Assembly: GCA_002269645.1 (NCBI GenBank) | Contig: NIVC01001908.1 | Location: 1 to 64,000 of the forward strand | Source: Macrostomum lignano | Lineage: Eukaryota | Length of the DNA: 64,000 bases | Direction of reading: 5' to 3' | Part shown: positions 33,960 through 62,716 of the stretch, one piece after another | Numbering within the stretch: the first letter of the stretch is position 1 | Layout of the letters: every line of letters begins with the position of its first letter | Position numbers and translations under genes: made by a program | The notes under the pieces: model-generated | Database searches by the model: none | What the model was told of the DNA's origin: nothing | Seen by the model: only the letters and a program-made list of their open reading frames with translations

Positions 33960-34144
33960 TCAAGCCTTAATGGCTGTGTGCGACTTGTTTTGCTGCTGCT
34001 GCGGCGTCTGTTGCTGCTGTTGAATTGTCTGTGGCGGAGTCTGCGAGCCGCTTGCCTGCTGCTGCTCAACCATGGAGGAGAGAGTCGGCCACGCCTGGCT
34101 CGGCGTTCTCGGAGTTACGAACTCGAATCCGTTCTGAGGCGGGC
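33960..34144 (-). CDS. LDB: Ldb exon 7 (terminal, Q-rich)
   Basis: CCGCAG acceptor in phase 1 gives CPPQNGFEFVTPRTPSQAWPTLSSMVEQQQ...KSHTAIKA-stop. AATAAA follows at 33913-33908. Confidence 0.8.
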
Positions 34145-34179
34145 CTGCGGATGGTGACCGTTTGTTATTTTGTTAAAAC

Positions 34180-34570
34180 ACTGACCAACTCGACAACAAC
34201 AGCACAGAACACTGACCAACTCGACAACAACAGCCCAAAACACTGACCAACTCGACAACAACAGCCCAGAACACTGAGCAACTCGACAACAACAGCTCAG
34301 AACACTGACCAACTCGACAACAACAGCACAGAACACTGACCAACTCGATAACAATATCTCAGAACACTGACCAACTCGATAACAATATCTCAGAACACTG
34401 ACCAACTTGATAACAATATCTCAGAACACTGACCAACTCGATAACAAAAACAACTCGAACACTGACAAACTCGACAACAGCTGCCCAGAACACTGACCAA
34501 CTTGGCAACAACAGCTCAGAACACTGACCGACTCGACAACAACAGCTCAGAACTCTGACAAACTCGATAA
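34180..34570. repeat. About 31-bp minisatellite in Ldb intron 6
   Basis: CAGAACACTGACCAACTCGACAACAACAGC units. Confidence 0.93.
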
Positions 34571-34623
34571 CACGAGTTAAGAAAACGGATTAAATAAGTA
34601 AGCAGACTTCAAAGCAAACTCAC

Positions 34624-34972
34624 AAGAATAAGCTGCATGCGGATGCTGCAACTGCCGTGACGGCTGTTTACTGCCGGTGAAATATCCCTGAGGTGGCAGC
34701 GGCGTTGGCGGCGGCGGCGGCAGCGGATTCGGGCAGTGCTGGCTCAGCATCGAGGCGAACCGGCCAACGGGTCGGCCAGTTGAGTCGCGCTCGAATGAAT
34801 TCTCCAGCGGTCCGCAGGCGGGTATTTCGAAGCCACCAGGCCCCGATCGCAGACAACCGTTCGGTAGTGCGTTGGGGTTGAACTGGCGATTTTCTAGTCG
34901 CGTTATCAACCGCTCGTCCTCGGCCCCAAACTCGCCGCCCATGAGAGTGGGCTCACCGACTATCATCACGTC
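34624..34972 (-). CDS. LDB: Ldb exon 6 (LIM-interaction domain)
   Basis: DVMIVGEPTLMGGEFGAEDERLITRLEN is the LID motif. GTGAGT donor at 34623 in phase 1; unspliced, the frame stops at 34577. Confidence 0.95.
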
Positions 34973-35019
34973 CTTGTGCAGGAGGAGGGGGTTGCTCTAT
35001 GCTAATAATAGTAATGTTT

Positions 35020-35820
35020 GTAGGAAGGCTGTTCACGGTCCAGCTCACTTGGATCACTTGGTCCAGCCCGTTTCAAAGGTAACGAGCTCGCTGACTCCCT
35101 CGCTAAGACGGGTACCCAGATTAATGACTGGGCGGATACCCTGCACCTGCGCACATGGGATGGCATTTCCGACTGCCGCCAATCCCGAGCGGCAGTGCCC
35201 AACCCGTCCCTCAAGCTGTGGAGAATCCTTTTGAACCAAAATCGAAAAGATATCCGCGATCTCACTATGACCTTCACAGGTCACGGTTGCTTTGCCAGGC
35301 ACTGTTTCCTCCGAGGCGTCCCCCGGAGTGAACTTTGCCTCCCTTTGCAACCTCGAGAACGAAGACGCCAAGCACTTTGTCTGCTACTGCCCGGCCTTCA
35401 ACCGAGACCGGCTCAACCACCTCGGGCCCAACCGGTCCCTGGATGACGTTTGCTGGCCAGAGAACATCCCACGGCTCATCCGGTTCCTCCGGGCTACCAA
35501 ACGAGTCTCCGTCTTCCCCACCGAAGACAAGGCTGCAGACAGGACCGGCAGACCTCCCTGACCGGCCCCGCGCCCTAGCTTTTGCGGGCTCTTTAGGGAT
35601 TAGCGGAATGGGCGACGCTCGCCTCCCCGCTGCGTCTTCGGACCGCCCTGCAGCTAAGTCAGGAAGGCTGTTGGCACCCTGGAGCAACTTTTCCAGCAAC
35701 ATCGTCTCACAACCAGCGCTGACGGCAATTCTACACATTCCGCTGACCCCTGAGCACATACAAGAGCGCCAATGCTCCGCGTCAGTAGTATGGTTATACT
35801 ACTGAGTAGAGGTGGCTTAG
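35020..35820 (+). mobile_element. 5'-truncated non-LTR retrotransposon (LOA/R1/I-like), antisense in Ldb intron 5
   Basis: LTWI..KGNELADSLAK is an RNase H C-terminal motif. It is followed by LLNQNRKDIRDLTMTFTGHGCF and a CCHC knuckle (C..CNLENEDAKHFVCYCP), with frameshifts near 35065 and 35340 and a stop at 35561. The 3' boundary is uncertain. Confidence 0.85.
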
Positions 35821-37031
35821 TAGCCATCAAATCATTTTATGGGAATATTTCAGAAGGACATTAAAGAAGCAAAAGATTACTGTACGCTCATTCCGTTGAC
35901 TTCAGTGCACGAAACATGATGAGTACACACAGCCTCACAGTGGGCACTGTGTATTATTCTTAATTACGTTCTTATCTTATTACATTCTCATCTTGTCACG
36001 TCGGGCTTGTGCACGAAAATTGACCGAAGGGCTGTACGGCGATTCACATCCGTCAGGGCCAACCCCCAAGGCTCAGAGAGTGTACGTGCCTGACGATTGG
36101 AGAGTCAGGGGCCGCTGTGCACCCGCTGTGTGAGCGCGTGTGTATTGTCACAGCATTGCATTGCACAGCAAGCCCCAGGCCTGCGAACTCGGGACCTCAG
36201 ATTCAAGAATTTGATCTGATCCAACTGCCCCTCTGTCTTTTCTGTCTTTGAAGAATTGCGTCTCTTTTTTATTTGAATTTGCGTCACACGGCGGTAGCTG
36301 ACGTTTCTCTTTCTAGTTAATTGTCCTGCCGATTTCCCCGACAGCGGTTGACCCTGATGGAATTTTTTCGCGATCGCCAAAGCAAAGCCGGATTGCCAGT
36401 CTGGCCAAAGTCGCGACAAAGGCGGGGCCCTCACCGGTGGCTAATGAAGGGCCGGGGGGAGTCGCTTCCTCTTCTTCCCCGACAATTATCGTGAGCAATT
36501 TTCTATAGGGGAGAAAATCTCTAGAAACGTCTTCCCTGCTGCTCCAAAGAGTCCGAATCTCGAGAGAGGGGGGATGAGAGACGATTCGGTGAATGGAAAA
36601 CTTCGATATGGAATTTCTGACAAAGACTGGGAGTGAACGGGCGGCCACTAATTTCATTAGTGACCGGGTCGAATCGAGCTCGGGATCCTCCCAGACGGTG
36701 TCTCTACGTCTACGTCTTGGCTGGGGGTGAGCGGAAGGGATAAAAGATGGAGTCTCGGTGGGGTGGGGAGACGGAAAATATGGGAGATTCAACAGCATCG
36801 CTGTTGACGGGACTGGCTTGCCCGATGAAGGGTTTGGGGGTAGAAAATACACATGTGCGGATGAAGCGAAGAGGCTGAGTCACTGCTCAATACCCCCAGG
36901 CATCACAGGCTGCGCCTGTTCAGTCGCTGATTTCCCTTGCAGTATTCTCACCTTCTGGCGCCATATCTGCGCGTCTTCTCTCTCTCTCGTCCAAGTGGTT
37001 TCATTCGATACCGATAAATTCCTTGACTCAC

Positions 37032-37040
37032 CCCTTGCAA

Positions 37041-37091
<51 letters not shown>

Positions 37092-37285
37092 CTGCTTCTG
37101 TGCTGCGCCAGACGCTGCCCCTGTCGTCTTCTTCTTGCCCTTCTTGGCACGACCGACACTGGTAGCTGGCGTCGAGTCAGTTTCCGGGGCGTTGCCATGG
37201 ATACCATTGTTATTGTTGTTGTTGTTGCCACTGTTGCTGCTATTCGTCTTTCTTTTGCGGCGTTTGCTTTGAGTTCGACTCGATT
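37032..37285 (-). CDS. LDB: Ldb exon 5 (NLS, polyN, polyQ)
   Basis: TTTTAG acceptor. ESSRTQSKRRKRK matches the Ldb NLS (Ldb1 PSKRRKRK). PolyQ tract, then a GTGAGT donor in phase 0. Confidence 0.93.
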
Positions 37286-37359
37286 CTAAAATTTGAGAAT
37301 TTGATGCGGAAATTAAGTTTTTACAAAAGAAATTTGATGCAGGTAGATTTGCAGGCAGG

Positions 37360-37658
37360 TCACATTCCTATCTTGTCACATTCCCATCTTGTTACATTCC
37401 CAACCAGTCACATTCCCATCTTATTACTCATTAAATTCCCAATCAGTCGTATTCTCATCTTGTCACATTCCTATCTTGTTACATTTCCATCTCATTACGT
37501 TTTTATCTCATTAAATTCCCAATCAGTCCCATTCTCATCTTGTCACATTCTCATCTTGTCACATTCCTATCTTGTCATATTTCCATCTTATTACGTTTTT
37601 ATCTTATTAAATTCCCAATCAGTCCCATTCTCATCTTGTCACATTCCCATCTTGTCAC
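37360..37658. repeat. Composite repeat in Ldb intron 4
   Basis: TCTTGTCACATTCC(C/T)A units with longer duplicated blocks. Confidence 0.85.
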
Positions 37659-37668
37659 GGCGACACAC

Positions 37669-37870
37669 CGGGAGGCGCCACCATGCGCTGCCACTTCTGA
37701 AACAGAGTTGTCTTCAAGCAGTCCCTGGGGTGCAGGCCGTAGGCCTTCTGCCGGCTCATCAGCTCCTGCATTGGCTCGAGGATGATGCAGAGGCGAAGAA
37801 AGTGCAGCGTGTGGTTCGTGATGCCCTGGCGAGTGATGTTGTGCGACATCTGATCCAGCACCTGGGGATC
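37669..37870 (-). CDS. LDB: Ldb exon 4
   Basis: DPQVLDQMSHNITRQGITNHTLHFLRLCIILEPMQELMSRQKAYGLHPRDCLKTTLFQKWQRMVAPP, close to Ldb1. Confidence 0.97.
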
Positions 37871-37947
37871 CTGGAGGATACGGTGGTGATTGGCTATCCG
37901 CTTTAACATTTCCCTCTCCCTCCGCCGCTTTGCCCCGCCCGCCCAAC

Positions 37948-38246
37948 CTGATGAGAGCCGACCGCCTGTCTGGGCACCATCTCTCGGCAGCTGCGGATCT
38001 GGAAGAGCCAGCTCTTGATCCGCATCATGTCGTCGAAGGTGAACTCCAGCACCAGCCGGCCCTCGGTTACCACGTTGGTGAGCATCGGCCGGACGTGGGT
38101 CGCGTGCATCTCGCCTCGGTCGCAGTCCAGAGTCAAGCTGGTGTTGTGAAACGATTCCCGGGCGTTCTTTAGGAATATGTACATGTCGGCCACTCCTCCG
38201 TCAAAGATGCTGCGAAAGTACCGCGGGATCAGGGTGCGACCGATGG
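37948..38246 (-). CDS. LDB: Ldb exon 3
   Basis: SIGRTLIPRYFRSIFDGG...EGRLVLEFTFDDMMRIKSW...HQ; 299 nt, phases 1 and 0 consistent. Confidence 0.97.
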
Positions 38247-38364
38247 CTGCAATGGCGGCGAGATGTGAGGGGGTGTTCGGGCCGGTGCTTAATTAGTCGG
38301 CAACACTAAAGGCTCATTAATAAATTCACTAATGTTGGTAAAAACTTATCAGAGGACGAGACTT

Positions 38365-38633
38365 GATGAACAAGGCTGAGGTCGGCAAGATCAAAGATAT
38401 CAATACCATCAAACTGAGTGAACAGGGCAGAGGTCGGCAAGATCAAAGGTGGCATCAAACTGAGTGAACAGGGCTGAGGTCGGCAAGATCAAAGGTGGCA
38501 TCAAACTGAGTGAACAGGGCTGAGGTCGGCAAGATCAAAGGTGGCATCAAACTGAGTGAACAGGGCTGAGGTCGGCAAGATCAAAGGTGGCATCAAACTG
38601 AGTGAACAGGGCTGAGGTCGGCAAGATCAAAGG
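38365..38633. repeat. 46-bp minisatellite in Ldb intron 2
   Basis: AACAGGGCTGAGGTCGGCAAGATCAAAGGTGGCATCAAACTGAGTG, about 5 copies. Confidence 0.95.
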
Positions 38634-38724
38634 TTAACACAAAAGCTTCAACACACAGGGTGGGCAGCGGAAAGTTAAAAAAAACAGTACTTGAGCTGTT
38701 AGATATCTTGTATCTTCCACTCAC

Positions 38725-38836
38725 AATAGCGCTTCGGCCCGTCCTCCATCAGCAGCTGGATGGTGAGCACCGAGTCGTCCTCGAAAAACTCGGTGGCAAA
38801 CTGGTCCCACCAGAAGTTCTGGCCGTCGCTTTCGCA
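38725..38836 (-). CDS. LDB: Ldb exon 2 (dimerisation domain)
   Basis: CESDGQNFWWDQFATEFFEDDSVLTIQLLMEDGPKRY (Ldb1 NLWWDAFTTEFFEDDAMLTITFCLEDGPKRY). ACAG acceptor and GTGAGT donor. Confidence 0.97.
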
Positions 38837-38913
38837 CTGTTATAAAAGTTAATTTTATAAATATTTGTCTATCGATGAAGACATTATATGCCAGAACAGT
38901 TTCCCCCACTGAC

Positions 38914-39159
38914 CTCTGGCCGCTGCTGCAGTCGCTTGTTCATCTCATGGATCCGAACGTCTGGAGTTCCCATCAGGCAGTGCTGCTGCGGGGGCGGCGG
39001 CGGCGGCAGAGGTGTCCTAAAAAATGGTGGGTCTTGATAAAATGCCTGCTGCTGCGGTGGCGGCGGAGGTGGCGGTGGCGGCGGCCCGAGCATCGACATC
39101 ATAGGTCCAGCCAACGGCGACATTCCCGACGGAGTTGGAGGCGGCGGCGGCGGCAGCAT
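38914..39159 (-). CDS. LDB: LIM domain-binding protein exon 1
   Basis: ATG at 39159 with an in-frame TAA upstream. A Pro-rich leader precedes DVRIHEMNKRLQQRPE (Ldb1 DYRIYELNKRLQNWTE). GTCAGT donor, phase 0. Confidence 0.9.
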
Positions 39160-42339: not shown

Positions 42340-43985
42340 TCCTGTCAGGTGCCTCACTTTGGGTGTCAGGTGCCTCACTTTGGGAGTCAGGAGTGCCTCA
42401 ATTTGGGTGTCAGCAGTGTCTCACTTTGGGTGTCAGGAGTGCCTCACTTTGGGTGTCAGGTGCCTCACTTTGGGTGTCAGGTGCCTCACTTTGGGTGTCA
42501 GCAGTGTCTCAATTTGGGTGTCAGGTGCCTCACTTTGGGAGTCAGGTGCCTCACTTTGGGAGTCAGGAGTGCCTCACTTTGGGTGTCAGGAGTGCCTCAC
42601 TTTGGGTGTCAGGTGCCTCACTTTGGGAGTCAGGAGTGCCTCACTTTGGGAGTCAGGAGTGCCTCACTTTGGGTGTCAGCAGTGTCTCACTTTGGGTGTC
42701 AGGAGTGTCTCACTTTGGTTGTCAGCAGTGTCTCACTTTGGGTGTCAGGAGTGTCTCACTTTGGTTGTCAGCAGTGTCTCACTTTGGGTGTCAGGAGTGC
42801 CTCACTTTGAATGTCAGGAGTGCCTCACTTTGGGTGTCAGGAGTGTCTCACTTTGGTTGTCAGCAGTGTCTCACTTTGGGTGTCAGGAGTGTCTCACTTT
42901 GGGTGTCAGGAGTGCCTCCCTTTGGGTGTCAGCAGTGTCTCACTTTTGGTGTCAGCAGTGTCTCACTTTGTTTGTCAGGAGTGTCTCACTTTGGGTGTCA
43001 GGAGTGCCTCACTTTGGGTGTCAGCAGTGTCTACTTTGAGTGTCAGGAGTGCCTCACTTTGGGTGTCAGGAGTGCCTCACTTTGGGTGTCAGCAGTGTCT
43101 CACTTTGAGTGTCAGGAGTGCCTCACTTTGGGTGTCAGGAGTGCCTCACTTTGGGTGTCAGAGTGCCTCACTTTGTGTGTCAGGAGTGCCTCACTTTGGG
43201 TGTCAGGAGTGCCTCACTTTGAGTGTCAGGAGTGCCTCACTTTGGGTGTCAGGAGTGCCTCACTTTGAGTGTCAGGAGTGCCTCACTTTGGGTGTCAGGA
43301 GTGTCTCACTTTGAATGTCAGGAGTGCCTCACTTTGGGTGTCAGGAGTGCCTCACTTTGAGTGTCAGCAGTGTCTCACTTTGAGTGTCAGGAGTGCCTCA
43401 CTTTGGGTGTCAGGAGTGCCTCACTTTGGGTGTCAGAGTGCCTCACTTTGTGTGTCAGGAGTGCCTCACTTTGGGTGTCAGGAGTGCCTCACTTTGGGTG
43501 TCAGGAGTGCCTCACTTTGGGTGTCAGGAGTGCCTCACTTTGGGTGTCAGGAGTGCCTCACTTTGGGTGTCAGGAGTGTCTCACTTTGAATGTCAGGAGT
43601 GCCTCACTTTGGGTGTCAGGATTGCCTCACTTTGGGTGTCAGGAGTGCCTCACTTTGGGTGTCAGGAGTGCCTCACTTTGGGTGTCAGGAGTGCCTCACT
43701 TTGTGTTTCAGGAGTGCTTCACTTTGGGTGTCAGGAGTGCCTCACTTTGGGTGTCAGGAGTGCCTCACTTTGGGTGTCAGGAGTGCCTCACTTTGGGTGT
43801 CAGGAGTGCCTCACTTTGGGTGTCAGGAGTGCCTCACTTTGGGTGTCAGGAGTGCCTCACTTTGGGTGTCAGGAGTGCCTCACTTTGTGTGTCAGGAGTG
43901 CCTCACTTTGTGTGTCAGGATTGCCTCACTTTGGGCGTCAGGAGTGCCTCACTTTGGGTGTCAGGAGTGCCTCACTTCAGAAGTC
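42340..43985. repeat. 23-bp satellite, block 2
   Basis: Same unit and orientation as 40180-41105. Confidence 0.95.
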
Positions 43986-44348
43986 AGTGTCAGACGCATC
44001 AAGGTTATTATCCGAACGACTCCAGACTTCGGACCAAGCAGCCGAATTCAATTAAACACTGGCTACCTTCTCCAGTTCCATGCATTCGGTTTGTCCTAAA
44101 ATTCACCCCCAGATGGCGCCAGTTCTGAAAAAAAAGATGTTTCTTAGCAACTCGTCTCACTTTTGCAGAGCGACTCCTTCGCCTCAATAGCTGAGCAGAT
44201 GGTGCGGCCAGGGCCATTCAGAGCGGAGGCTGTAGCAGAAAATTGATTGATTAAAATAGCCAAACTAATTCACCGACCGGCAAAGACATTACTTGGAACA
44301 AAGACACGGGTATGGAAAAATGTCAATACAAGATTGTCAACAGCCAGT

Positions 44349-44467
44349 GGCAACGGCCATACCACGTTGAAAACACCGGTTCTCGTCTGATCACCGAAGT
44401 TAAGCAACTTTGGGTTTGGTTAGTACTTGGATGGGTGACCGCCTGGGAATACCAAATGCTGTTGTCT
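44349..44467 (+). rRNA. 5S rRNA
   Basis: GGCAACGGCCATACCACGTTGAAAACACCGGTTCTCG...AGTACTTGGATGGGTGACCGCCTGGGAATACCAAATGCTGTTGTC. Helix I (GGCAAC/GTTGTC) pairs and the internal A/C boxes are present. Confidence 0.97.
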
Positions 44468-44471
44468 TTTT
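44467..44471 (+). terminator. Pol III T5 terminator of the 5S gene
   Basis: TTTTT immediately after the 5S 3' end. Confidence 0.85.
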
Positions 44472-44837
44472 GCATCTTTTAACTGCCGCGCGCTCATTAA
44501 CACTAATTCCATGCAGCTGCTGCACGCATTAATACAGTACTTTGATCCCTTCGAATCGATCAAGTTTACATGCGCACTGTGCACGTGATGACGCGATGCA
44601 CTACAATAGTTTTACGAGTATGCGGCGCCTTCTAAACATGTCGGCTAAAAGAAAGGCAGAGCTGCACATGCACTTTTTGGCGCGTCTTTTCAAGCTGCAG
44701 TGCACAAGAATGCTGCACTAGTCGGCATAACTTACTTGGAGTAGATGAAATTCTACATAATCATTTGCCCTAGGGCTCGCGGCTCAAGCGCAGAGCTGTG
44801 CACTGTTGGAGAGCGTTTTTCCATTCCACTCCCTTTG

Positions 44838-44950
44838 CCGTTTTGACGGTCTCTTACTGCGAAGACTCAATATTTTGCATGGTAAGACACCGCGTGGATC
44901 CAATTGAGCGATCTACTCAATTTTTGACAAGCCGCACTTTCGCGGCTGCC
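44838..44950 (+). ncRNA. Spliced-leader (SL) RNA gene, flatworm type
   Basis: A 44-nt leader ending in TTGCATG, a GTAAGA donor at 44882 that can pair with TCTTAC in the leader, hairpin TGGATC/GATCTA, Sm site AATTTTTGA (44919-44927) and terminal hairpin AGCCGC/GCGGCT. Confidence 0.92.
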
Positions 44951-45755
44951 TAACAAAGCTAATATATTTACTTGGCCCTGCTCTGAAAACTTAAGATAGT
45001 ACAGCCTTGCTTCAGTTTGATATACAATTGTAACGTATTTATTGGTTGACTTGATTACAGCTACATGTATGCATATGTAAACCATTGCTTCATATTGTTT
45101 ACATCGATCAGATAAAAAAATCTTTTCTTTTGTTATACTATGCTTGTAACTCTGCTAAATACCAGTAGAGAAGTTTGTAATTGGATTCTATCTTAAGTAT
45201 ATAATTAACGTCCTGGGCTGGCTAATCTTTTCTGATAAAAATTGCAAAGGAAGATTACAGTTCGATCAAAAGCAAAATAAAAAATGATATACAAATAGCA
45301 CTAAATAGCAAATTTGAGCCAGTCTGACACAGTCATGATTTTGTGTTGATTGAAATTTAATTATGGAATTCTGTAGACTTATACAATATTTAAGTTTCGT
45401 CTAGTGATTTTTGGCATGGCTTCTTCTTGAGGATACGAATATACCTTTAACACTCATATCCAAAGTAATTATATAGAGATAGCGAGCCGTCTTTTTCGGA
45501 AAAATTTCTCTTTAAGACTCCAAATGAAAATATGTAAAACTTTTCATAATTTTTAAAAGGTGACACAAAATAAATAAATAATATAATTATTAGAAATATA
45601 AAGGTAACATATTTGGGAATTTTGTTATGGTGCTTTCACGGCCGAAAATAAAATTTCGCACGAGCTTAAAATGAGCGTAAAACAGGTTCACGCGCGTTGT
45701 TCATTATAGATGCTCGTGTCGTATCATACTAGAAAAACAAAAAAATCAATTGATA

Positions 45756-45843
45756 ATGGCGGAACAGTCTTGCCTTTTTGTGATCATTGGGCGCTGTCGC
45801 ACTGAAGAGGACAATATACATCAGGAGAACTTGTTGACTTCAG
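45756..45843 (+). CDS. MAP1: MAP1/futsch-like protein exon 1
   Basis: MAEQSCLFVIIGRCRTEEDNIHQENLLTS (cf. MAP1B FYLLVVVGEIVTEEH). AG|GTAAAA donor, phase 1. Confidence 0.75.
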
Positions 45844-46382
45844 GTAAAATCTAAAAATACGTAACTAATAATTCATTAATTTAATAGTTTTTTTCTGAGC
45901 CAGATTTACTCTGAAAACACGATCAATGTAGATACTTTAAGTGTTTAGTGCTTTTTGAAAAAATGATAGGATAATTTAAAGCACTCTGACCTTTATAACT
46001 AGAGTGAACTTGTTTTAAATTCTTACATATATTTTCGTTACATACAGAAATTATTGTATTTAGCTTCTTGTGCAAAGCAGCAAAGTAATTTTTAAATGTT
46101 TCACAGCCTCGGATTTTTATTTAGGTATTTATTGCAAAGCTAACAATAGTGGAGGGGATTTTAGTAAATAAAAATTATTTAATCTTTTAGGATTAAATTT
46201 GAACACTTTTTGACTGGGTTTACATGTTTTCAATTCTCAAATTTTAATTCAAGTATTTTGAAGTTCCTTTATAGACGACTTTGTGTTACTTATTCAGCTG
46301 TATTTTTATATATTTTTTAAACTATACGTACTAGCTCGTAACAAAAAAAAACGAAAAGCATGATTGAATAAATTTTTTTCAG

Positions 46383-46484
46383 GTCTTCTGGCATGGGAGG
46401 GCCTCGCAGATCCTGGACTGAAGTCAGATCTTTTGCAGATTCTGTCCGCGGCTAAAGGATCACAGACAAATTATAGTCGCGGCG
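46383..46484 (+). CDS. MAP1: MAP1-like exon 2
   Basis: TTTTCAG acceptor and GTGAGT donor, phases 1/1. GLLAWEGLADPGLKSDLLQILS (cf. MAP1B GIRSWD..LDQELKLFVS). Confidence 0.8.
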
Positions 46485-46654
46485 GTGAGTATCTGCTACT
46501 TAAGTTTTTAAGCTGTAAATGCTTTCGCGGCTTGCATACTGAAATATTTATAAAACCATTTTAACTTTAAAGTCTCTCACCCTCTCTTCTTTCTTTGAAC
46601 TGAGAAAGAGTCGAGAGGATTGAAACTGGTTGCCAATAACTCGACACGCAGTGA

Positions 46655-47682
<1,028 letters not shown>

Positions 47683-48204
47683 CGTTTTGAGAATCAGCCG
47701 TCAGCCGCGCTCAGACAGGAAAGAAGCCAACCCCCCCGAGCTCACAGCAGGGAATATTTTCATACTAAAGGCGCGATCGCAGAGCCCAAGTCGGAGGGCC
47801 CCATGCAGTAGGGTACAAAGGCGAGTCCTCATCCTTCCGCCAGTTAGGCTGAATTCTCACTTGACAGAGGGACGCGCTGTTCCGTTGGAGTCCCATCCCC
47901 CTAGGGAATTTCCGTTGACCATCTCAGCTTCCATAGTTTCCCATTTCTCTCTCTGCCACCCAGCATCTCCGTCTCTCATTGCAGCCTCTTACATTACTTG
48001 CTTGCCAGCCTCATCAAATTGAGTGCAGATGCAGAAAGCGGCTTGGCTTGGCCTGGGCTTGAAAAAATGAGTCCCCAGAGGTTGAAGACTTTTGCACTAT
48101 TGTTAACTCTGAGTTCTGGCTTGATGCAGGCGCTTTATGGGGTTGCTGCCTGCTTGGTATGTTAGGAAATTCTTTGCGAGATTATTGCTTACCCAGTGTT
48201 TATG

Positions 48205-54350: not shown

Positions 54351-54650
54351 TAGATGCCACTAGATGCGACTAGGTGCCACTACATGCCACTAGATGCCAC
54401 TAGGTGCCACTAGAGCCCACTAGATGCCGCTAGATGCCACTAGCTCAGATGCCACTACATGCCACTAAATGCCACTAAATGCCACTAGATGCCACTAGAT
54501 GCCACTAAATGCCACTAGATGCCACTAGATGCCACTAGATGCCACTAAATGCCAATAGATGCCACTAAATGCCAATAGATTCCAATAGATGCCACTAAAT
54601 GCCAATAGATGCCACTAGATGCCACTAGGGGCCACTAGGTGCCACTAGAT
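54351..54650. repeat. 10-bp repeat upstream of MAP1 exon 3
   Basis: (TAGATGCCAC)n. Confidence 0.95.
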
Positions 54651-54830
54651 ATCACCTGATGGTCGATTGTTAGCTCTATGACAGTTGTGTATCTGCTGCT
54701 TCAATGCATTTAGATTACCACCTTGACTGACCAAAGCAGTAATTTCACGCCATCGAATATTGTATAAGCTGTGAGTTGGTTGTCCTTAGCCTAGTAGATT
54801 CGAAACGACACCGCTGCCTCACCGCCGCAG

Positions 54831-55646
54831 GCTGCCTGACCGGCGCTTCGGACAGTGGCCGGCTCCGCCTGGTGCTGCTGGCGGACCCGGACCACGACAC
54901 GCTGGCCAACCAGCTGTCCAGCCCGCAGCTGCAGGCCGCCGCCTACCAGAGCGTCCACCTGGTGTTCGCTGGGGCCGTCACGGCCGAATACGGCGACTGG
55001 GCGCTGCGGGACGCCGCTTTGAGTCCCGGCCGACTCGCCCGCCTCCTGCCGGCTCCCCAAGACGCCAAAGAGGCTCGAGCCAGACTCCACATTTGCGGCC
55101 CCAGCTCTGGGCCGCACTGGCGCGCGCTGTCTGGCGCCGTCGCCTCCGCCGTGCGCCAGCTGGACGCGTCGCAGTCAGAGGCCGGCGCCGGCGCCGAAGA
55201 AGCCGCCAAATTGGCGCGGCTGCTCTGCGACTTGGCAGCCGGAGCCGCCATCGACATGTCGGAGCCGTCTCCGACGTCAACGCCGGCCCCGACGACAACG
55301 ACGACAACTTCGGCGCGACGGCCTCGAGTGCTGATCTTCGATGACGGGGATGCCTCCAGCTGCTGCGTCGGGCTGGACGGCTTCCAGCTGGTGTGCAACG
55401 GCGGCGCTGGCCAGCGGCTCGACTGCCTGCGACATCTGCGCCGGCAGCGACGCCGAATCGACGCTTTGCTGGTGACGCATTGGTCGAGCGACACCGCGCC
55501 GGGGCTTCGGGCGCTGATGGAGAAGCTTGAGGCTGAGGCTGAGGCTGAGGCTGAAGCTAAAGCTGAAGCTGAGATGGCGGAGCTTGGGGCTGTGCTGCTC
55601 CCATGCCGGCCCGCTGAGGCTGAAGATGCTGCTGAGGATGACAGCG
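54831..55646 (+). CDS. MAP1: MAP1-like exon 3 (conserved N-terminal domain)
   Basis: RPRVLIFDDGDASSCCVGLDGFQLVCNGG...RIDALLVTHW...ELGAVLL matches MAP1 KPCCYIFPGG..FAVNGFNMLINGG..RVDSILLTH..DLGVVFL. GCAG acceptor, GTGAGG donor (alternative at 55671); 816 nt, phases 1/1. Confidence 0.9.
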
Positions 55647-55704
55647 GTGAGGCTGAGGCTGGGGCGATGGGTACCAAGGGGTGATTTATAGCTTAGATCA
55701 AGTT

Positions 55705-56328
55705 AGATCTAGTGGGCATCTAGTGACATCTAGTGAGACCTAGTGACATCTAGTGACATCTAGTGACATCAAGTGACATCTAGTGACATCTAGTGACATC
55801 TAGTGACATCTAGTGACATCTAGTGACATCGAGTGGCATCTAGTGACATCTAGTGACATCGAGTGACATCTAGCGACATCTAGTGACATCGAGTGGCATC
55901 TAGTGACATCTAGTGACATCTAGTGACATCTAGCGACATCTAGGGACATCGAGTGGCATCTAGTGACATCGAGTGACATCTAGCGACATCGAGTGACATC
56001 TAGTGACATCTAGTGACATCTAGTGACATCTAGTGACATCGAGTGGCATCTAGTGACATCTAGTGACATCTAGTGACATCGAGTGACATCTAGCGACATC
56101 GAGTGACATCTAGTGACATCTAGTGACATCTAGTGACATCTAGTGACATCGAGTGGCATCTAGTGACATCTAGTGACATCGAGTGACATCTAGCGACATC
56201 TAGTGACATCTAGTGACATCTAGTGACATCGAGTGGCATCTGGTGACATCTAGTGACATCTAGTGACATCTAGTGATATCTAGTGATATCTAGTGACATC
56301 TAGTGACATCTAGTGACATCTAGTGACA
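55705..56328. repeat. 10-bp repeat in MAP1 intron 3, inverted relative to 54351-54650
   Basis: (GTGACATCTA)n with GTGGCATCTA variants. Confidence 0.95.
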
Positions 56329-56346
56329 TCATCCCGACATCATCAG

Positions 56347-56704
56347 GCCAGCGGCAGCCGCTTCAGACGAGCGCCCGCTTGGACAGCGCAGCCGCCTACC
56401 GCCTGATGCTGCGCCGAGCCGCCGTCGTCAGAGACTTCGCCTGCCCCGCCGCCGCCGGCCCACCGCCCGGCCTGCCGCTGTACTCCCGGCTCGACTCCGG
56501 CAGCCTCGAGCTGCGGCCGCTGCTGCCCTGCGCCGGCTCGCGGGAGCTGGCGGAGCTCGCCAAACAGCTGCGGTCGGCACCGTCAGCTGGTCACATGCCG
56601 ACACTGAAACTGGGAGATCGGGCCGTTCGATTGTGGGACGCGGCCTCGGGCTGCGCTCTGTTGCTATGGCGACCGACGCGATTCGCGATAGGAGGAAATA
56701 GCAG
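56347..56704 (+). CDS. MAP1: MAP1-like exon 4
   Basis: LPLYSRLDSGSLELRPLLP..CALLLWRP (MAP1 ITLFQKMGVGKLEMYVLNP..SSLIVWHP). Donor AG|GTGTGT in phase 2. Confidence 0.88.
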
Positions 56705-56739
56705 GTGTGTAATTTTTTTACTTTGGAAACATCCATAGA

Positions 56740-57185
56740 TATTCTATCCAGATCGACAGAGATTCAATACAGATCTATAGGGATTCAATACAGATCTATA
56801 GGGATTCTTTCCATATCTATAGGGATTCTTTCCAGATCTATAGGGATTCTTTCCAGATCTATAGGGATTCTTTCCAGATCTATATAGATTTAATACAAAT
56901 CTATAGGGATTCTATCGACATCTATAAAGATTCTAACTAGATCTAAAGAGATCCCATCCAGATCTATAGAGATCCCATCCAGATCTTTAGAGATCCCATT
57001 CAGATCTATAGAGATCCCATCCAGATCTATAGAGATCCCATCTAGATCTATAGAGATCCCTTCCATCCATCCCTCCATAGAGATTCTATCCAGATCTATA
57101 GATATTATACCAAGATCTATAGAGATTCTACCGATATAAAACTAGACTAATAGAGATTCTACCTACATGTAGATCTATAGAGCGC
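56740..57185. repeat. About 21-bp degenerate repeat in MAP1 intron 4
   Basis: GATCTATAGGGATTCTTTCCA and GATCTATAGAGATCCCATCCA units. Confidence 0.85.
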
Positions 57186-57261
57186 TATAGAGAGTTAGTT
57201 GGGTTCTTCGAGCTCTCCGATATCGTCAGGCACGCTCTCCGACCGCCCCCACCCCCGGCAG

Positions 57262-60200
57262 GTGCGCGCGCATCCTCCTGCCAGGCGCTGCACCTGCGGC
57301 GCGCGTAGCGCGCGGACTCGATCGATTGCGGGTCGGCCTTGACTGCCTGCACACGCCGGACGGCAGGGGCTCGGCCGCGGCGGCTGCGGCGGCTTCAGCG
57401 GCGGCCAGTCGACGACGCGGCGCTTCGTCGACTCGTCGACAGCCACCGTCGGAGTCGCCAACAGTCGGCGCCGCAGGGGCTCCGAGCTTCAGGCGCGCCG
57501 TCTCCCAGCCGCCGACCCCGCCGCCGCCGCCGACGTCACCAGCGCCGCCTCCGATGCGCAAGCCGGCTCTGCCACCGTCGCCGAAGCCGCCGGCGGTGAC
57601 GCCAACGCAGCAGCAGCAGCGTCGAAGTCGAGCGCCGTTGAAGTCGGCCGCCTCGGAGCCGGCCAAGTCGAAGAGAGCTCCTGTCAGAGCGCCGCCGCCA
57701 GCAGTTCGCGTCGTTAAGTCACCGACGCCGAGTTTGTCGAGCGAGAGGCTGGTGGAGAAATCAGCAACACTGAATGCGCGGATGCCCGCCGTCAAACGGC
57801 TGCCGCCGTGTCGTCGAAATGAACAGGAGGAGAAAGCGGCAAGTGAGCCGATGGAGAAGGAGGCAGCAAATTCGAAAACTTCCCTTGAGCATAATGAAAA
57901 ATTGAATGGCGTACTGGGGGAATCTCATGAGCCAGCAGAGGAATCTCATGAGCCAACCAAGGAATCTCATGAGCCAGCAAAAGAATCTCATGAGCCAGCC
58001 AAGGAATCTCATGAGCCAGCGAAAGAATCTCATGAGCCGACAAAAGAATCTCATAAGCCAGCAGAGAAATCTCATGAGCCAGTCGAGAAATCTCATATGC
58101 CAGCAGAGGAATCTCATCAATCTCATGAGCCAGCAGAGGAATCTCATGAGCCAGCAGAGGAATCTCATGAGCCAGCAAAAGAATCTCATGAGCCAGCAAA
58201 AGAATCTCATGAGCCAGCCAAGGAATCTCATGAGCCAGCAAAAGAATCTCATGAGCCAGCCAAGGAATCTCATGAGCCAGCAGAGGAATCTCATGAGCCA
58301 GCGAAAGAATCTCATGAGTCAGTGGAGGAATCTCATGAGCCAGAAGAGGAATCTCATGAGTCAGTGGAGGAATCTCATGAGCCAGCAGAGGAATCTCATG
58401 AGTCAGTGGAGGAATCTCATGAGCCAGAAGAGGAATCTCATGAGTCAGTGGAGGAATCTCATGAGCCAGCAGAGGAATCTCATGAGTCAGTGGAGGAATC
58501 TCATGAGCCAGAAGAGGAATCTCATGAGTCAGTGGAGGAATCTCATGAGCCAGCAGAGGAATCTCATGAGTCAGTGGAGGAATCTCATGAGCCAGAAGAG
58601 GAATCTCATGAGTCAGTGGAGGAATCTCATGAGCCAGCAGAGGAATCTCATGAGCCAGCAGAGGAATCTCATGAGCCAGTCAAGGAATCTCTAGCACAAC
58701 TTGCAGAATCATCAAGTATGATGCAGCAGTCCATTTATATTGAAAGGGAATCTGCGGACACATCAGCTGACCATAAAAACGAACACAAGAAAGAGATAAA
58801 AAATAACGACTCTGAGAATGCTGTCGATCTTACTCAGGTTGATTCGGACACTTACGGTCCTGAAGCGAAGCAGTCTGAGCCTGAAGTGAAGCAGACTGAA
58901 CCTGAAGTGAAGCAGACTGAACCTGAAGTGATGCAGACTCAACCTGAAGTGGAGCATCCTGAGGCTGAAGTCGCCTCGCACGAGCCTGAAGTGAAGCATC
59001 CGGAACCTGAAGTGAACCAGTCTGAGTCTGAAGTGAAGCAGCTTGAGCCTAAAATCCCCTGTCACAAACCTGAAGTAAAGCAGAATCAACCTGAAATGGA
59101 GCATCCTGAGATTAAAATCAGCCAGTCTGAGGCTGAAGTCGTCTCGCAAGTGCCTGAAGCTAAACAGTCTGAGCCTGAAGTCACCTCTCACGAGCCTGAA
59201 GTGAAGCAGTCTGAGGCTGAAGTCAGCCAGTCCGAGGCTGAATTCGCCTCGCACGAAGCTGAAGTGAAGCAGGCTGCGCCTGAAGTAAAGCAACCTGAGG
59301 CTGAAGTCACCTTGCACGAGCCTGAAGTAAAGCAGCCTGAGCCTGAAGTGAAGCAGCTTGAGCCTGAAGTAAAGCAGTCTGAGCCTGAAGTGAAGCAGTC
59401 TGAACCTGAAGTGAAGCAGTCTGAACCTGAAGTAAAGCAGCCTGAGGCTGAAGTGAAGCAGCTTGAGCCTGAAGTCACCTCTCACGAGCCTGAAGTAAAG
59501 CAGCCCGAGCCTGAAGTGAAGCAGACTCAACCTGAAGTGGAGCATCCTGAGACTAAAGTCAGCCAGTCTGAGGCTGAAGTCACCTCTCACGAGCCTGAAG
59601 TGAAGCAGTCTGAGCCTGAAGTGACCTCTCACGAGCCTGAAGTGACCTCTCACGAGCCTGAAGTGACCTCTCACGAGCCTGAAGTGACCTCTCACGAGCC
59701 TGAAGTGACCTCTCACGAGCCTGAAGTGACCTCTCACGAGTCTGAAGTTACCTCTCACGAGCCTGAAGTTACCTCTCACCAGCCTGAAGTGACCTCTCAC
59801 GAGCCTGAAGTGACCTCTCACGAGCCTGAAGTTACCTCTCACGAGCCTGAAGTGACCTCTCACGAGCCTGAAGTGACATCTCACGAGCCTGAAGTGACCT
59901 CGTACGAGCCTCAAGTGACCTCTCACGAGCCTGAAGTCACCTCTCACGAGCCTGAAGTCACCTATGACCAGCCTGAAGTGAACCAGTCGGAGCCTGAATT
60001 CAAGCAGCCTGAGCCTGAACTGAAACTGCCTGAGGTTAAAGTCGCTTCGCAAGAAGCTGAAGTGAAGCAGCCTGAACCTGAAGTGAAGCAGCCTGAGGCT
60101 GAAGTGAAGCAGCCTGAGGCTGAAGTCAGCCAGTCTGAGACTGAAGTCACCTTGCAGGAGCCTGAAGTGAAGCAGTCTGAGCCTGAAGTGAAGCAGCCTG

Positions 60201-61927
60201 AGGTTGAAGTCAGCCAGTCTGAGGCTGAAATCACCTTGCTGGAGCCTGAAGTGAAGCAGTCTGAGGCTGAAGTCAAACAGCCTGAGGCTGAAGTCAGCCA
60301 GTATGAGGCTGAAGTCGCCTTGCACGAGCCTGAAGTAAAGCAGCCTGAGCCTGAAGTGAAGCAGTCTGAGCCCGAAGTGAAGCAGTCTGAGCCTGAAGTG
60401 AAGCAGCCTGAGGCTGAAGTCAGCCAGTCTGAGGCTGAAGTCAGCCAGTCTGAGGCTGAAGTCAGCCAGTCTGAGGCTGAAATCACCTTGCAGGAGCCTG
60501 AAGTGAAGCAGTCTGAGGCTGAAGTCAAACAGCCTAAATCTGAATTGAACCAGTCTGAGCCTGAAGTGAAGGAGCCTGAGGCTGAAGTCAGCCAGTCTGA
60601 GGCTGAAGTCAGCCAGTCTGAGGCTGAAATCACCTTGCAGGAGCCTGAAGTGAAGCAGTCTGAGGCTGAAGTCAAACAGCCTAAATCTGAATTGAACCAG
60701 TCTGAGCCTGAAGTGAAGGAGCCTGAGGCTGAAGTCAGCCAGTATGAGGCTGAAGTCGCCTTGCACGAGCCTGAAGTGAAGCAGTTTGAACCTGAAGTCA
60801 AGCAGCCTGAGCCTGAAGTCAGCCAGTATGAGACTGAAGTCGCCTTGCACGAGCCTGAAGTAAAGCAGCCTGAGCCTGAAGTGAAGCAGTCTGAGCCTGA
60901 AGTGAAGCAGTGTGAGCATGAAGTGAAGCAGTCTGAGCCTGAAGTGAAGCAGCCTGAGTCTAAAGTGAAGCAGTCTGAGCCTGAAGTAAAGCAGCCTGAG
61001 TCTGAAGTAAACCAGCCTGAAGCTAAAGTCGCCTCTCACGTGCCTGAGATAGAATTCATTCAGTTTGATGCGGACTCACAAGAAAAGAGTGCTAAATCCT
61101 TTCAAGTTGAAGGAGCCGATGAGGAAGCTATTGAGCAATCACAAGTAAAAGAGCCGTACGTTGACTGCCTTCCGCAGATTCAGGACGAAAATATGATTTA
61201 TCTTCAAGGCCATGAGGCTAACAGCATTGAGACTGCAGATGAGAAATCTCACAAACCAGAAACTGATAATCAGAGTCTCGAGGAGAAATCTCACGAACCG
61301 GAAGCTGATAATCAGAGCCTCGAGGATAAATCTCACGAACCGGAAACTGATAACCAGAGCCTCGATGAGAAATCTCTCGAACCGGAATCTGGTAATCAGA
61401 GCCTCGAGGAGAAATCTCACGAACCGGAAGTTGATTCTCGGAGCCTCGACGATAAATCTCACAAACCGGAAACTGAAGCTGAGGCAGGACAAGAGGAATC
61501 TATCGAGTCCAGCAACCACCAGAATTCATTGCCCGCAGACGGAATGCAGCAATCTCTGGGACCAGACGAGCTGCAACATCTCAAGGCGTCTCAAGACGCC
61601 GAATTTAAAGACGCTGACTCCCTTGATGAAGATTACAGGGAGTCTGGCTGGCAGCTGAGCTGGCAGAGGACTGCATCATCGAAGAATACTATCAAGGAAG
61701 TGACCTCCACATTCGAAGAATCCCATTCGTTGACCTCGCGAAGCGAGAAGACTGAGTCAACTTTCCTAGAAATCTCTTCCGCCGAATCGGCAGTCATAAA
61801 GGAGGCGGCATTCAGCGATGGCAGCGACTCCGAATCTTCCGTGGTGGAAGCGACCGCCAACGTTGCGCCGAAGCAGCTGGATCCCCTGCGCGACTGGGGC
61901 AGCCCGCTGGCTCTGCCACCAGGCATT

Positions 61928-61981
<54 letters not shown>
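57262..61981 (+). CDS. MAP1: MAP1-like exon 5: basic Pro-rich region, acidic heptad repeats, polyQ
   Basis: ARILLPGAAPAARVARGLDRL (MAP1 IRVLFPGNSTQYNILEGLEKL). The frame is open for 4720 nt and ends at an AAG|GTATGT donor in phase 0. Confidence 0.92.
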
Positions 61982-62049
61982 GTATGTTTTAATATGTATC
62001 TTAACCCTGGAATGTAGCTCGTTGAAAATTTCCAAGTTCGTCAAAATTC

Positions 62050-62330
62050 CCTGGATCCCTGGATTCCCATTCTGACACCTGGATTCCCGTTCTGGTAACT
62101 GGATTCCCGTTCTGGTACCTGGATTCCCGTTCTGACTCCTGGATTCCCGTTCTGGTACCTGGATTCCCGTTCTGACTCCTGGATTCCCGTTCTGGTACCT
62201 GGATTCCTACTCTGGTACCTGGATTCCTACTTTGGTACCTGGATTCCTACTTTGGTACCTGGATTCCTACTTTGGTACCTGGATTCCCGATCTGGAACGT
62301 GGATCCCCGTTCTGGCACCTGGATTCCCGC
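62050..62330. repeat. 20-bp minisatellite in MAP1 intron 5
   Basis: CCTGGATTCCCGTTCTGGTA units. Confidence 0.93.
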
Positions 62331-62344
62331 TGCATGAATTTCAG

Positions 62345-62716
62345 CAGCAGCAACAGCCAGCCGGTTTCGTACGCCCTGTGTGGCTGGATCTGGCCTACCT
62401 GCCCAGCGGCCAGTCCGCCATCGGTGCAGAATTTTTCCATCGCGTCCGGGCGGCCCGCTACGTCCTGCCCGGCCGGCTGGCTGACCCGGACACTCTGGAC
62501 GCTCTGCTGGCCGCCAAGGAGGCCGCCTGGCCGGACCAGCCGTCCGTGCTGGTACCGGCCCGACCCGACTGTCCGCGACTGGCCGCCTGGCTGTCCGGCA
62601 ATTCGGACAGGGCGCGAAAGGCCCACCTGACTGTGGCGACGGCGGCGGAGGCTTCGGCCGGGATCAGCAGGGTGCGCATCGGGTCCGGTCGAGAGGCCTG
62701 GTGCATCGAGCTCTGA
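62345..62716 (+). CDS. MAP1: MAP1-like exon 6 (light-chain C-terminal domain)
   Basis: PVWLDLAYLP..EFFHRVRAARYV..TLDALLAAK..W..WCIEL-stop matches MAP1 PVYVDLAYIP..DFFRRVRASYYV..VLDALLEGK..ACKIEF. Confidence 0.95.
   Translation, partial: QQQQPAGFVRPVWLDLAYLPSGQSAIGAEFFHRVRAARYVLPGRLADPDTLDALLAAKEAAWPDQPSVLVPARPDCPRLAAWLSGNSDRARKAHLTVATAAEASAGISRVRIGSGREAWCIEL

What the first reader, a model, noticed from the sequence alone, without database searches (positions are those of the whole stretch)
44349..44950. Solitary 5S rRNA-SL RNA gene unit between divergent Ldb and MAP1 genes
Seen: a complete SL RNA gene lies about 370 bp after the 5S terminator on the same strand. It has a 44-nt AUG-terminated leader, a GU donor held in a stem, a middle hairpin, an Sm site AAUUUUUGA and a 3' hairpin. 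Only one copy of the pair occurs in the window, flanked by single-copy genes. Known: 5S-SL linkage occurs in nematodes, some trypanosomatids, Euglena, Oikopleura and some cnidarians, usually in tandem arrays. Inferred: this is either an orphon of a 5S-SL repeat or a dispersed functional unit. I do not know of such linkage being described for macrostomids.
Basis: partly seen in the sequence, partly recalled or inferred. Interest (0 to 1): 0.8.

Follow-up and report, generated by a model that had tools for sequence, protein, structure and literature searches.

The report
Lone 5S gene beside variant spliced-leader gene
In the flatworm Macrostomum lignano, one intact 5S ribosomal RNA gene is followed 369 bases later by an intact-looking but unannotated variant of the spliced-leader RNA gene, a modest addition to a gene linkage already known in other animal groups.

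Summary
A full-length 5S rRNA gene (44349-44467, Rfam 112 bits) ends in a T5 terminator. An SL RNA-type gene (44837-~44950) lies 369 nt downstream on the same strand. It has a 45-nt AUG-terminated leader, a GUAAG donor buried in stem I, a second hairpin, the Sm site AAUUUUUGA and a 3' hairpin. Both genes occur once in the 64 kb.

The window is Macrostomum lignano: its Ldb gene encodes UniProt A0A1I8HQR1 exon for exon.

The leader differs at 5 of 45 positions from the SL shared by M. lignano, M. cliftonense and M. hystrix. The 3' half is only about 60% identical to canonical-type genes recovered from two stray macrostomid-like contigs. All 15 stem-I pairs, the donor, the Sm site and the three-hairpin layout are kept, so divergence is uneven rather than decay-like.

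Neither stray contig has a 5S gene; one has U1 snRNA 305 nt upstream instead. So 5S-SL linkage does not hold at these other loci.

My reading is a dispersed small-RNA gene pair with a divergent, possibly active SL paralogue. Expression and genome-wide copy number could not be tested. It is a new member of a known kind, of moderate interest.

The parts
44349..44467 (+). 5S rRNA gene, full length
   Evidence: Rfam RF00001 at 112.2 bits, E 7e-24, model 1-120. Published M. lignano 5S primers match exactly.
44467..44471 (+). T5 run, the expected RNA polymerase III terminator of the 5S gene
   Evidence: Read directly from the sequence...GTTGTCTTTTTGC. The terminator role is inferred from general Pol III biology.
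44472..44836 (+). 5S-SL spacer. It is unique in the window and carries 8 TGCAC motifs, so it is a candidate regulatory region for the SL gene.
   Evidence: Only a self-hit by BLAST. TGCAC occurs 8 times against 0.35 expected, and 0 of 2000 shuffles reach 8. It is the densest such stretch in the window. The function is inferred only.
44837..44950 (+). Variant SL RNA gene, about 114 nt. The 3' end is not mapped.
   Evidence: Model R1, built from canonical-type genes only: 62.2 bits, E 5.6e-14, sole hit in the window. BLAST E 7e-20. Three-hairpin fold with z -3.3.
44837..44881 (+). Leader exon of 45 nt ending in AUG. It matches the canonical Macrostomum SL at 40 of 45 positions.
   Evidence: Sequence. 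Published SLs. All 5 changes fall at unpaired positions.
44882..44886 (+). 5' splice donor GUAAG, paired inside stem I
   Evidence: Sequence; fold. Identical to L002 and L003.
44847..44892 (+). Stem-loop I, which pairs the leader with the donor region
   Evidence: Fold. All 15 pairs are invariant across the window, L002 and L003.
44894..44916 (+). Hairpin II (GUGGAUC / GAUCUAC), in a different register from the canonical UGAUCCA / UGGAUCA
   Evidence: Folds. The model could not align it in register.
44919..44927 (+). Sm-binding site AAUUUUUGA in a single-stranded stretch
   Evidence: Sequence; unpaired in the folds. A weak U5-like match covers the Sm site plus the 3' hairpin. The canonical-type genes have AUUUUUAG here.
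44930..44947 (+). Hairpin III (AGCCGC / GCGGCU). It is the canonical AGCCC / GGGCU stem with one extra or swapped G-C pair.
   Evidence: Folds. All 5 aligned pairs hold, with one change on both sides.
33963..38973 (-). Context: Ldb (LIM-domain-binding) gene, 7 exons, equal to M. lignano UniProt A0A1I8HQR1
   Evidence: tblastn at 97-100% per exon. Pfam LIM_bind. Homologue search top hit at 100%.
54743..62713 (+). Context: MAP1B-like gene with N-terminal MBL-like domain, a giant repetitive exon and a C-terminal block
   Evidence: Pfam MBL_MAP1B at 8.5e-11. A 1608-codon repetitive ORF at 57191-62014. The C-terminal block resembles the MAP1 light-chain region by my own inspection.

Best explanation
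This is a solitary small-RNA gene pair in the M. lignano genome, lying in the roughly 16-kb minisatellite-rich region between the divergently oriented Ldb and MAP1 genes.

The upstream member is an ordinary 5S rRNA gene. It would be transcribed by RNA polymerase III from its internal promoter and terminated at the T5 run.

The downstream member is a divergent paralogue of the species' spliced-leader RNA gene. If active, polymerase II would transcribe it from the 369-nt spacer as an RNA of about 110 nt. The RNA would bind Sm proteins at AAUUUUUGA between hairpins II and III. It would then donate its 45-nt AUG-terminated leader to pre-mRNAs at the G|GUAAG donor held in stem I. That mechanism is inferred from SL RNA biology, not shown here.

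The pattern of change points to a copy that has been kept working, or was until recently, rather than a freely decaying one. The leader and donor half is 91% conserved with every stem-I pair intact. The 3' half is only about 60% identical, yet it still forms hairpin, Sm site and hairpin. I put about even odds on present-day expression and use as a minor SL.

The close spacing of the two genes most likely reflects joint duplication of a small-RNA gene cluster. It is not evidence of a genome-wide 5S-SL repeat.
For: - Gene identities.
- Species.
- Variant status: published SLs, against the sequence.
- Intact architecture: folds (z about -3.2 to -3.3), matching the layout of canonical-type genes L002 and L003.
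- Stems: all 15 stem-I pairs and 5 hairpin-III pairs hold in all three genes.
- Uneven divergence: 51 of 56 positions identical in the 5' part against 58-65% in the 3' part, Fisher p 8e-4. The 3' part is still above the shuffle mean of 49%.
- All 5 leader changes fall at unpaired positions.
- The terminal AUG, the donor and a consensus Sm site are all retained.
- Solitary status.
- Other macrostomid-type SL genes have different neighbours: none detected on L002, U1 snRNA on L003.
Against: - There are no expression data of any kind.
- Published M. lignano, M. cliftonense and M. hystrix surveys report a single SL sequence, so this leader is at best minor.
- Canonical-type SL RNAs are about 94% identical across two species over their whole length. 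The variant's altered hairpin II, Sm site and loops could therefore equally mean loss of constraint.
- Covariation has no statistical power with three sequences: 164 of 500 shuffles do as well.
- No promoter element could be identified.
The comparison uses stray contigs from unidentified macrostomid-like species.
Confidence: 0.5

Rival explanations
1. Inactive relic (orphon or pseudogene). A 5S + SL unit was copied away from its source, and the SL copy is no longer transcribed or used. Its intact look is residual.
For: - It is a single copy in a repeat-rich intergenic region.
- Its leader has never been reported among SLs of this well-studied species.
- It departs from canonical features that are otherwise conserved between species: the hairpin II register, the Sm-like AUUUUUAG and the loop sequences.
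- SL pseudogenes are common in other SL-using animals.
Against: - There is no truncation. The donor, AUG, Sm site and all three hairpins are intact.
- Divergence is strongly uneven, 91% against about 60%, p 8e-4, whereas neutral decay predicts uniform change.
- No change hits any of the 15 stem-I pairs.
- Hairpin III carries a two-sided change that keeps pairing.
Confidence: 0.35
2. Local sample of a general organisation. In M. lignano, SL RNA genes normally reside in the 5S rDNA repeat, as in nematodes, Euglena and Oikopleura. This locus would then be a detached, diverged unit of that array.
For: - M. lignano has a tandem 5S cluster whose outward-facing primers give a 1645-bp product, which leaves room for an SL gene.
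- Adjacency of two rare small-RNA genes within 369 nt is very unlikely by chance.
- SL genes are 'often' close to 5S genes across eukaryotes. C. elegans SL1 is in the 5S repeat.
Against: - Two canonical-type macrostomid SL genes have no 5S within 0.6-1.6 kb upstream or about 2 kb downstream.
- The published M. lignano SL annotation (8 copies) does not mention 5S.
- There is no trace of a second unit or partial repeat around the locus.
Confidence: 0.12
3. Artefact: a chimeric assembly junction placing a 5S gene next to an SL-like gene.
For: Both belong to multi-copy families, and the surroundings are rich in tandem repeats.
Against: - The 2.5 kb from 43990 to 46550 is unique sequence with no repeat at either gene boundary.
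- The SL copy is a distinct variant, not a collapsed canonical copy.
Confidence: 0.03

Closest known systems
Canonical Macrostomum lignano SL RNA gene (109 bp, 8 copies in the deduplicated assembly; Ustyantsev & Berezikov 2021, PMC8629364)
   Same: Same species and same family. The 5' hairpin stem GCCG/CGGU, the 25-nt leader core, the terminal AUG and the GUAAG donor all match. Both have three hairpins and an Sm-type site between the last two.
   Different: There are 5 of 45 leader substitutions: AAA>UUU in the 5' loop, plus a U>A and an A>U near the apex of stem-loop I. Judged against canonical-type genes L002 and L003, the variant also has a re-registered hairpin II, a consensus Sm site (AAUUUUUGA rather than AUUUUUAG) and a longer hairpin III. 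It is not retrievable by the 100%-match search used for the annotation.
5S rDNA-SL1 tandem repeat of Caenorhabditis (about 110 copies in C. elegans; PMC1657053, PMC7986045), and similar 5S-SL units in Euglena, some trypanosomatids, dinoflagellates, Oikopleura and Hydra (the latter from my own knowledge)
   Same: An SL RNA gene and a 5S rRNA gene are physically linked within a few hundred bases.
   Different: In those cases the unit is tandemly reiterated and encodes the major SL. Here it is a single copy with a variant SL, on the same strand. In C. elegans the two genes are on opposite strands (my own knowledge).
Orphons: solitary dispersed copies of tandemly repeated gene families such as histone, rDNA and 5S (concept from my own knowledge)
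   Same: A lone 5S gene lies away from the species' 5S cluster at the end of chromosome arm MLI2p.
   Different: Orphon status requires the parent array to contain the same unit. That has not been shown for the SL part.
SL RNA sequence variants and multiple SL classes in other flatworms: S. mansoni variants and suspected pseudogenes (PMC2770079); several SL-RNAs used indiscriminately in parasitic flatworms (PMC12582326); planarian SL1, SL2 and SL3
   Same: A paralogous SL RNA gene with a leader that differs by a few bases but keeps the donor, the AUG and an Sm site.
   Different: Usage is documented for those variants. For this one there is no expression evidence, and M. lignano has so far been described as having one SL.
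U1 snRNA-SL RNA linkage on contig L003 (JAGQZA010000190.1), found here
   Same: An SL RNA gene lies 300-370 nt downstream of another small-RNA gene on the same strand.
   Different: The neighbour is a Pol II snRNA gene rather than 5S, the SL is canonical, and the species is different and unidentified.

Membership tests
5S rRNA gene (Rfam RF00001) | Covariance-model score above the curated threshold over the full length | tested here: met
   112.2 bits against 38, model positions 1-120.
5S rRNA gene (Rfam RF00001) | Pol III terminator (T run) directly after the gene | tested here: met
   TTTTT at 44467-44471.
5S rRNA gene (Rfam RF00001) | Matches the species' known 5S sequence | tested here: met
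   Both published M. lignano 5S primers match exactly.
Macrostomid SL RNA gene | Sequence-plus-structure homology to bona fide SL RNA genes of the group | tested here: met
   A model built from L002 and L003 only: 62.2 bits, E 5.6e-14, unique in the window. BLAST E 7e-20.
Macrostomid SL RNA gene | Leader identical to the SL actually found on the species' mRNAs | tested here: not met
   40 of 45 identical, and 33 of 35 over the published 35-nt SL.
Macrostomid SL RNA gene | GU splice donor immediately after the leader, base-paired with the leader | tested here: met
   G|GUAAG at 44882-86 within stem I. 15 of 15 pairs conserved.
Macrostomid SL RNA gene | Single-stranded Sm-binding site flanked by two 3' hairpins | tested here: met
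   AAUUUUUGA at 44919-27 between hairpins 44894-916 and 44930-47.
Macrostomid SL RNA gene | snRNA-type upstream promoter | tested here: inconclusive
   There is no in-register conservation, even between the two canonical-type genes. A TGCAC cluster of unknown meaning lies in the spacer.
Macrostomid SL RNA gene | Transcribed, TMG-capped, and leader trans-spliced to mRNAs | not testable with these tools
   No RNA data are accessible. Look-ups for ORF calls over the locus found nothing.
5S-SL tandem repeat unit (nematode, Euglena or Oikopleura type) | SL and 5S genes within one short unit | tested here: met
   369-nt spacer, same strand.
5S-SL tandem repeat unit (nematode, Euglena or Oikopleura type) | The unit is reiterated head to tail | tested here: not met
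   One copy of each gene and of the spacer in 64 kb.
5S-SL tandem repeat unit (nematode, Euglena or Oikopleura type) | The genome's SL genes in general are 5S-linked | tested here: inconclusive
   Not linked on L002 or L003, which come from other species.
Orphon | A parent tandem array containing the same 5S+SL unit | not testable with these tools
   A 5S array exists, with a 1645-bp product. Its sequence is not held.
SL RNA pseudogene | Truncation, or loss of the donor, Sm site or hairpins | tested here: not met
   All elements are intact.
SL RNA pseudogene | Uniform, structure-blind divergence from the functional gene | tested here: not met
   91% against 58-65% identity between the two halves, p 8e-4. 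No change falls in a stem-I pair. Caveat: the reference genes come from other species.

The most novel reading that the evidence does not exclude
M. lignano, described so far as having a single spliced leader, has a second functional SL RNA class. It would have its own leader, with 5 differences including the last 10 nt before the AUG, and a consensus Sm site. It would be encoded next to a 5S rRNA gene. This would be the first 5S-SL linkage reported in Platyhelminthes, and the variant might be used on a particular subset of mRNAs.
Probability: 0.3. Interest if true: 0.6.

Novelty: new member of a known kind. Interest (0 to 1): 0.45.

Why it matters
M. lignano is a laboratory model for regeneration and stem cells, and about 30% of its genes are reported to be SL trans-spliced. 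Its trans-splicing maps were built with one exact leader sequence. If the variant is used, reads carrying it have been missed or mis-trimmed, and gene 5' ends and operon calls would need a small correction.

5S-SL linkage recurs in distant phyla. It is often cited in arguments over whether SL trans-splicing arose once or many times, so a flatworm case, even a solitary one, adds a data point.

The U1-SL pair on another macrostomid contig suggests a broader pattern. SL genes may tend to sit just downstream of other small-RNA genes. If the variant is silent, the locus is simply a well-preserved relic and is ordinary.

Tried and rejected
- Rfam has no model that recognises this SL RNA. Only a sub-threshold U5-like match over the Sm site plus the 3' hairpin was found.
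- I tried to fetch other genomic copies through spurious ORFs that run across the SL or 5S gene, and through the Ldb protein. Exact look-ups found nothing. A homologue search with the ORF over the SL gene found no candidate.
- The first Ldb-exon search did not reveal the species. A second, composite query did.
- The suspected shared promoter motif TGCCNTAG at -71 in the window and L002 is not significant: 604 of 5000 shuffles do as well. It is absent from L003. Even L002 and L003 share nothing upstream in register, so I dropped the promoter argument in both directions.
- The candidate 3' box (AAYAAAG after hairpin III) is too weak to claim.
- Covariation statistics on three sequences have no power.
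- I found no target-site duplications, terminal repeats or second partial unit around the pair, so there is no support for a transposon carrier or a multi-unit array fragment.
- There are no tRNA genes in the window. The bacterial-type promoter and terminator scan is irrelevant here.
- Wasik et al. 2015 is not held. No paper holds either variant-specific leader string. The viral contig scan was empty.

Full report
**What is there.** Rfam places a full-length 5S rRNA gene at 44349-44467 on the plus strand (112.2 bits, gathering score 38, E 7e-24). It is followed at once by TTTTT at 44467-44471.

After a spacer of 369 nt (44468-44836), the sequence GCCGTTTTGACGGTCTCTTACTGCGAAGACTCAATATTTTGCATG|GTAAG begins at 44837. 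Folded as RNA, 44837-44950 gives:
- stem-loop I, in which the leader pairs with the donor region (44847-44892);
- hairpin II (44894-44916);
- a single-stranded stretch holding AAUUUUUGA (44919-44927);
- hairpin III (44930-44947).

The free energy is -36.2 kcal/mol with z = -3.3. The 3' half folded alone gives z = -3.2. No Rfam SL family matches. Only a sub-threshold U5-like hit covers the Sm site and the last hairpin.

The 25-nt leader core occurs once in the window, with 0 expected. The 5S gene, the spacer and the SL gene all have only self-hits in the 64 kb.

**Which organism.** A first homologue search with one Ldb exon gave nothing closer than 68%. A second, composite query returned UniRef A0A1I8HQR1 from Macrostomum lignano at 100%. 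tblastn maps that 466-residue protein onto seven minus-strand exons between 33963 and 38973 at 97-100%, with mismatches only at exon edges. The two published M. lignano 5S primers also match the window's 5S gene exactly. The window is M. lignano.

Pfam confirms LIM_bind for the left-hand gene and the MAP1B MBL-like domain for the right-hand gene, which starts near 54.7 kb. The pair thus lies in a divergent intergenic region of about 16 kb. Most of that region is minisatellite, with periods of 23, 34, 22, 10, 4 and 2 nt.

The SL found on M. lignano mRNAs is CCGTAAAGACGGTCTCTTACTGCGAAGACTCAATTTATTGCATG (PMC5173321; the 35-nt form is in PMC8629364). M. cliftonense and M. hystrix have the same sequence (PMC10468722 supplement).

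The window's leader differs at five positions. AAA becomes TTT in the loop of the 5' hairpin, and there is a T>A and an A>T near the apex of stem-loop I. The published M. lignano SL RNA gene (109 bp, eight copies) was found by demanding 100% BLAST matches to the 35-nt SL. That search would not have picked up this locus. No paper in the library contains either variant-specific string.

**Comparators.** One scan of metagenome contigs and one of prokaryote genome contigs for the shared leader core turned up three stray pieces of macrostomid-like DNA.
- L001 is the 5' end of a trans-spliced mRNA.
- L002 is a 3-kb animal genomic contig. It carries a canonical-leader SL RNA gene at 615-722 and an intronless Na/K-ATPase beta gene downstream.
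- L003 is a 3.75-kb contig wrongly binned in a Flavobacteriaceae MAG. It carries a canonical-leader SL RNA gene at 1589-1696.

The L002 and L003 flanks share nothing, yet their SL RNAs are identical for the first 56 nt and 81% identical after that. They have the same hairpin II stem, the same AUUUUUAG and the same AGCCC/GGGCU hairpin III. The canonical RNA is therefore constrained along its whole length across species.

A covariance model built from these two genes alone finds 44837-44953 at 62.2 bits (E 5.6e-14). It finds nothing else in the window.

**How the variant differs.** Against either comparator, the first 56 nt are 51/56 identical. The remainder is 58-65% identical in a gapped alignment. 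The shuffle mean is 49%, and 0 of 500 shuffles reach the observed value. The two halves differ significantly (Fisher p = 8e-4).
- All 15 stem-I pairs are unchanged, and all five leader changes fall at unpaired positions.
- The five aligned hairpin-III pairs all hold, with one two-sided change and effectively one extra G-C pair.
- Hairpin II is rebuilt in another register: GUGGAUC/GAUCUAC instead of UGAUCCA/UGGAUCA.
- The Sm-type site is closer to the general consensus than in the canonical genes.

With three sequences the pair counts carry no statistical weight: 164 of 500 shuffles do as well. M. lignano's own canonical intron half was not available, so this comparison is across species. These are real limits.

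**Function.** Nothing here measures expression. Several features argue against plain decay: the retained donor, AUG, Sm site and three hairpins, the untouched stem I, and the uneven divergence. Arguing against importance are the single copy, the absence of this leader from published SL surveys, and departures from features that are otherwise conserved between species.

Promoter comparison is uninformative. A tentative shared motif at -71 is not significant. Even the two canonical-type genes share nothing upstream in register except YCTTT just before +1.

I put roughly even odds on the gene being an active minor SL donor. I put about one in three on it being a silent relic.

**Linkage.** Two rare small-RNA genes lying 369 nt apart on one strand is very unlikely to be coincidence, so they were probably copied together. 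This does not establish a 5S-SL repeat.
- There is one unit in 64 kb, with no partial second unit, flanking duplication or terminal repeat.
- L002 has no recognisable RNA gene in 614 nt upstream.
- L003 has a U1 snRNA gene (151.7 bits) ending 305 nt upstream of its SL gene, on the same strand.

M. lignano does have a tandem 5S cluster at the end of MLI2p. Outward-facing primers give a 1645-bp product, which leaves room for another gene (PMC5704211; PMC7013459).

The literature treats 5S-SL proximity as common among eukaryotes (PMC7346339; C. elegans; C. briggsae). I found no report of it for any flatworm.

**An unexplained detail.** The spacer carries eight TGCAC motifs on the plus strand, mostly as GCTGCAC or GTGCAC. 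Shuffles predict 0.35, and 0 of 2000 reach eight. It is the densest such stretch in the window, holding 8 of the 43 plus-strand sites. The motif is absent upstream of the L002 gene. It may be a cluster of factor-binding sites for the SL gene, but that is a guess.

**Verdict.** This is a new, divergent member of the SL RNA gene family in a model flatworm, paired with a solitary 5S gene. It is a known kind of arrangement in a phylum where I found it undescribed. Interest is moderate. It would rise if the variant leader is found on mRNAs, or if the 5S array proves to contain SL genes.

Noticed in passing
L003 1121-1283 and 1589-1696 (JAGQZA010000190.1): A contig binned in a 'Flavobacteriaceae' MAG is clearly flatworm-type DNA. 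It holds a U1 snRNA gene (151.7 bits) and, 305 nt downstream on the same strand, a canonical Macrostomum-type SL RNA gene, plus TTAGGG-like repeats near 270-340. This is both contamination of a public MAG and a U1-SL linkage.
   Followed up: partly
window 44472-44836: The 5S-SL spacer holds eight TGCAC motifs on one strand (about 33 times the window average; 0 of 2000 shuffles reach eight). They are not periodic, and their meaning is unknown.
   Followed up: partly
window 40177-41104 and 42349-43977; 48195-49639; 50534-51358; 54351-54650; 46656-47682: The Ldb-MAP1 intergenic region is dominated by long minisatellites. There are two 23-nt arrays of 40 and 72 copies, a 34-nt array of 43 copies, a 22-nt array of 38 copies and a 10-nt array. 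There are also (CT)n and (TGTC)n tracts. The 23-nt arrays keep long spurious ORFs open in three frames.
   Followed up: no
window 57191-62014 (+): The MAP1B-like gene contains one open exon of about 1600 codons built almost entirely of short acidic repeats (ESHEPAE and PEVKQSE types). It is followed by a conserved C-terminal block at about 62350-62710.
   Followed up: no
window 45000-46500: GC content drops sharply from 46% to 31% immediately downstream of the SL gene. This 1.5-kb AT-rich stretch is unique in the window.
   Followed up: no
window 35024-35560 (+), inside an Ldb intron: ORF fragments here contain ...GNELADSLAK... and ...TGHGCF... strings. By eye they resemble the RNase H and C-terminal part of a non-LTR retrotransposon. 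Pfam gave no hit at E <= 1, so this remains unverified.
   Followed up: partly
window 797-836 and L002 153-191: A 40-nt stretch is 85% identical between the M. lignano window and the stray contig L002, outside the SL gene (E 2.6e-5). It may be a shared repeat family, which would hint that L002 comes from a related macrostomid.
   Followed up: no
window 44299-44320 and 44816-44837: A 22-nt imperfect inverted repeat (77% complementary) links the sequence just upstream of the 5S gene with the sequence just upstream of the SL start. It is probably chance.
   Followed up: no
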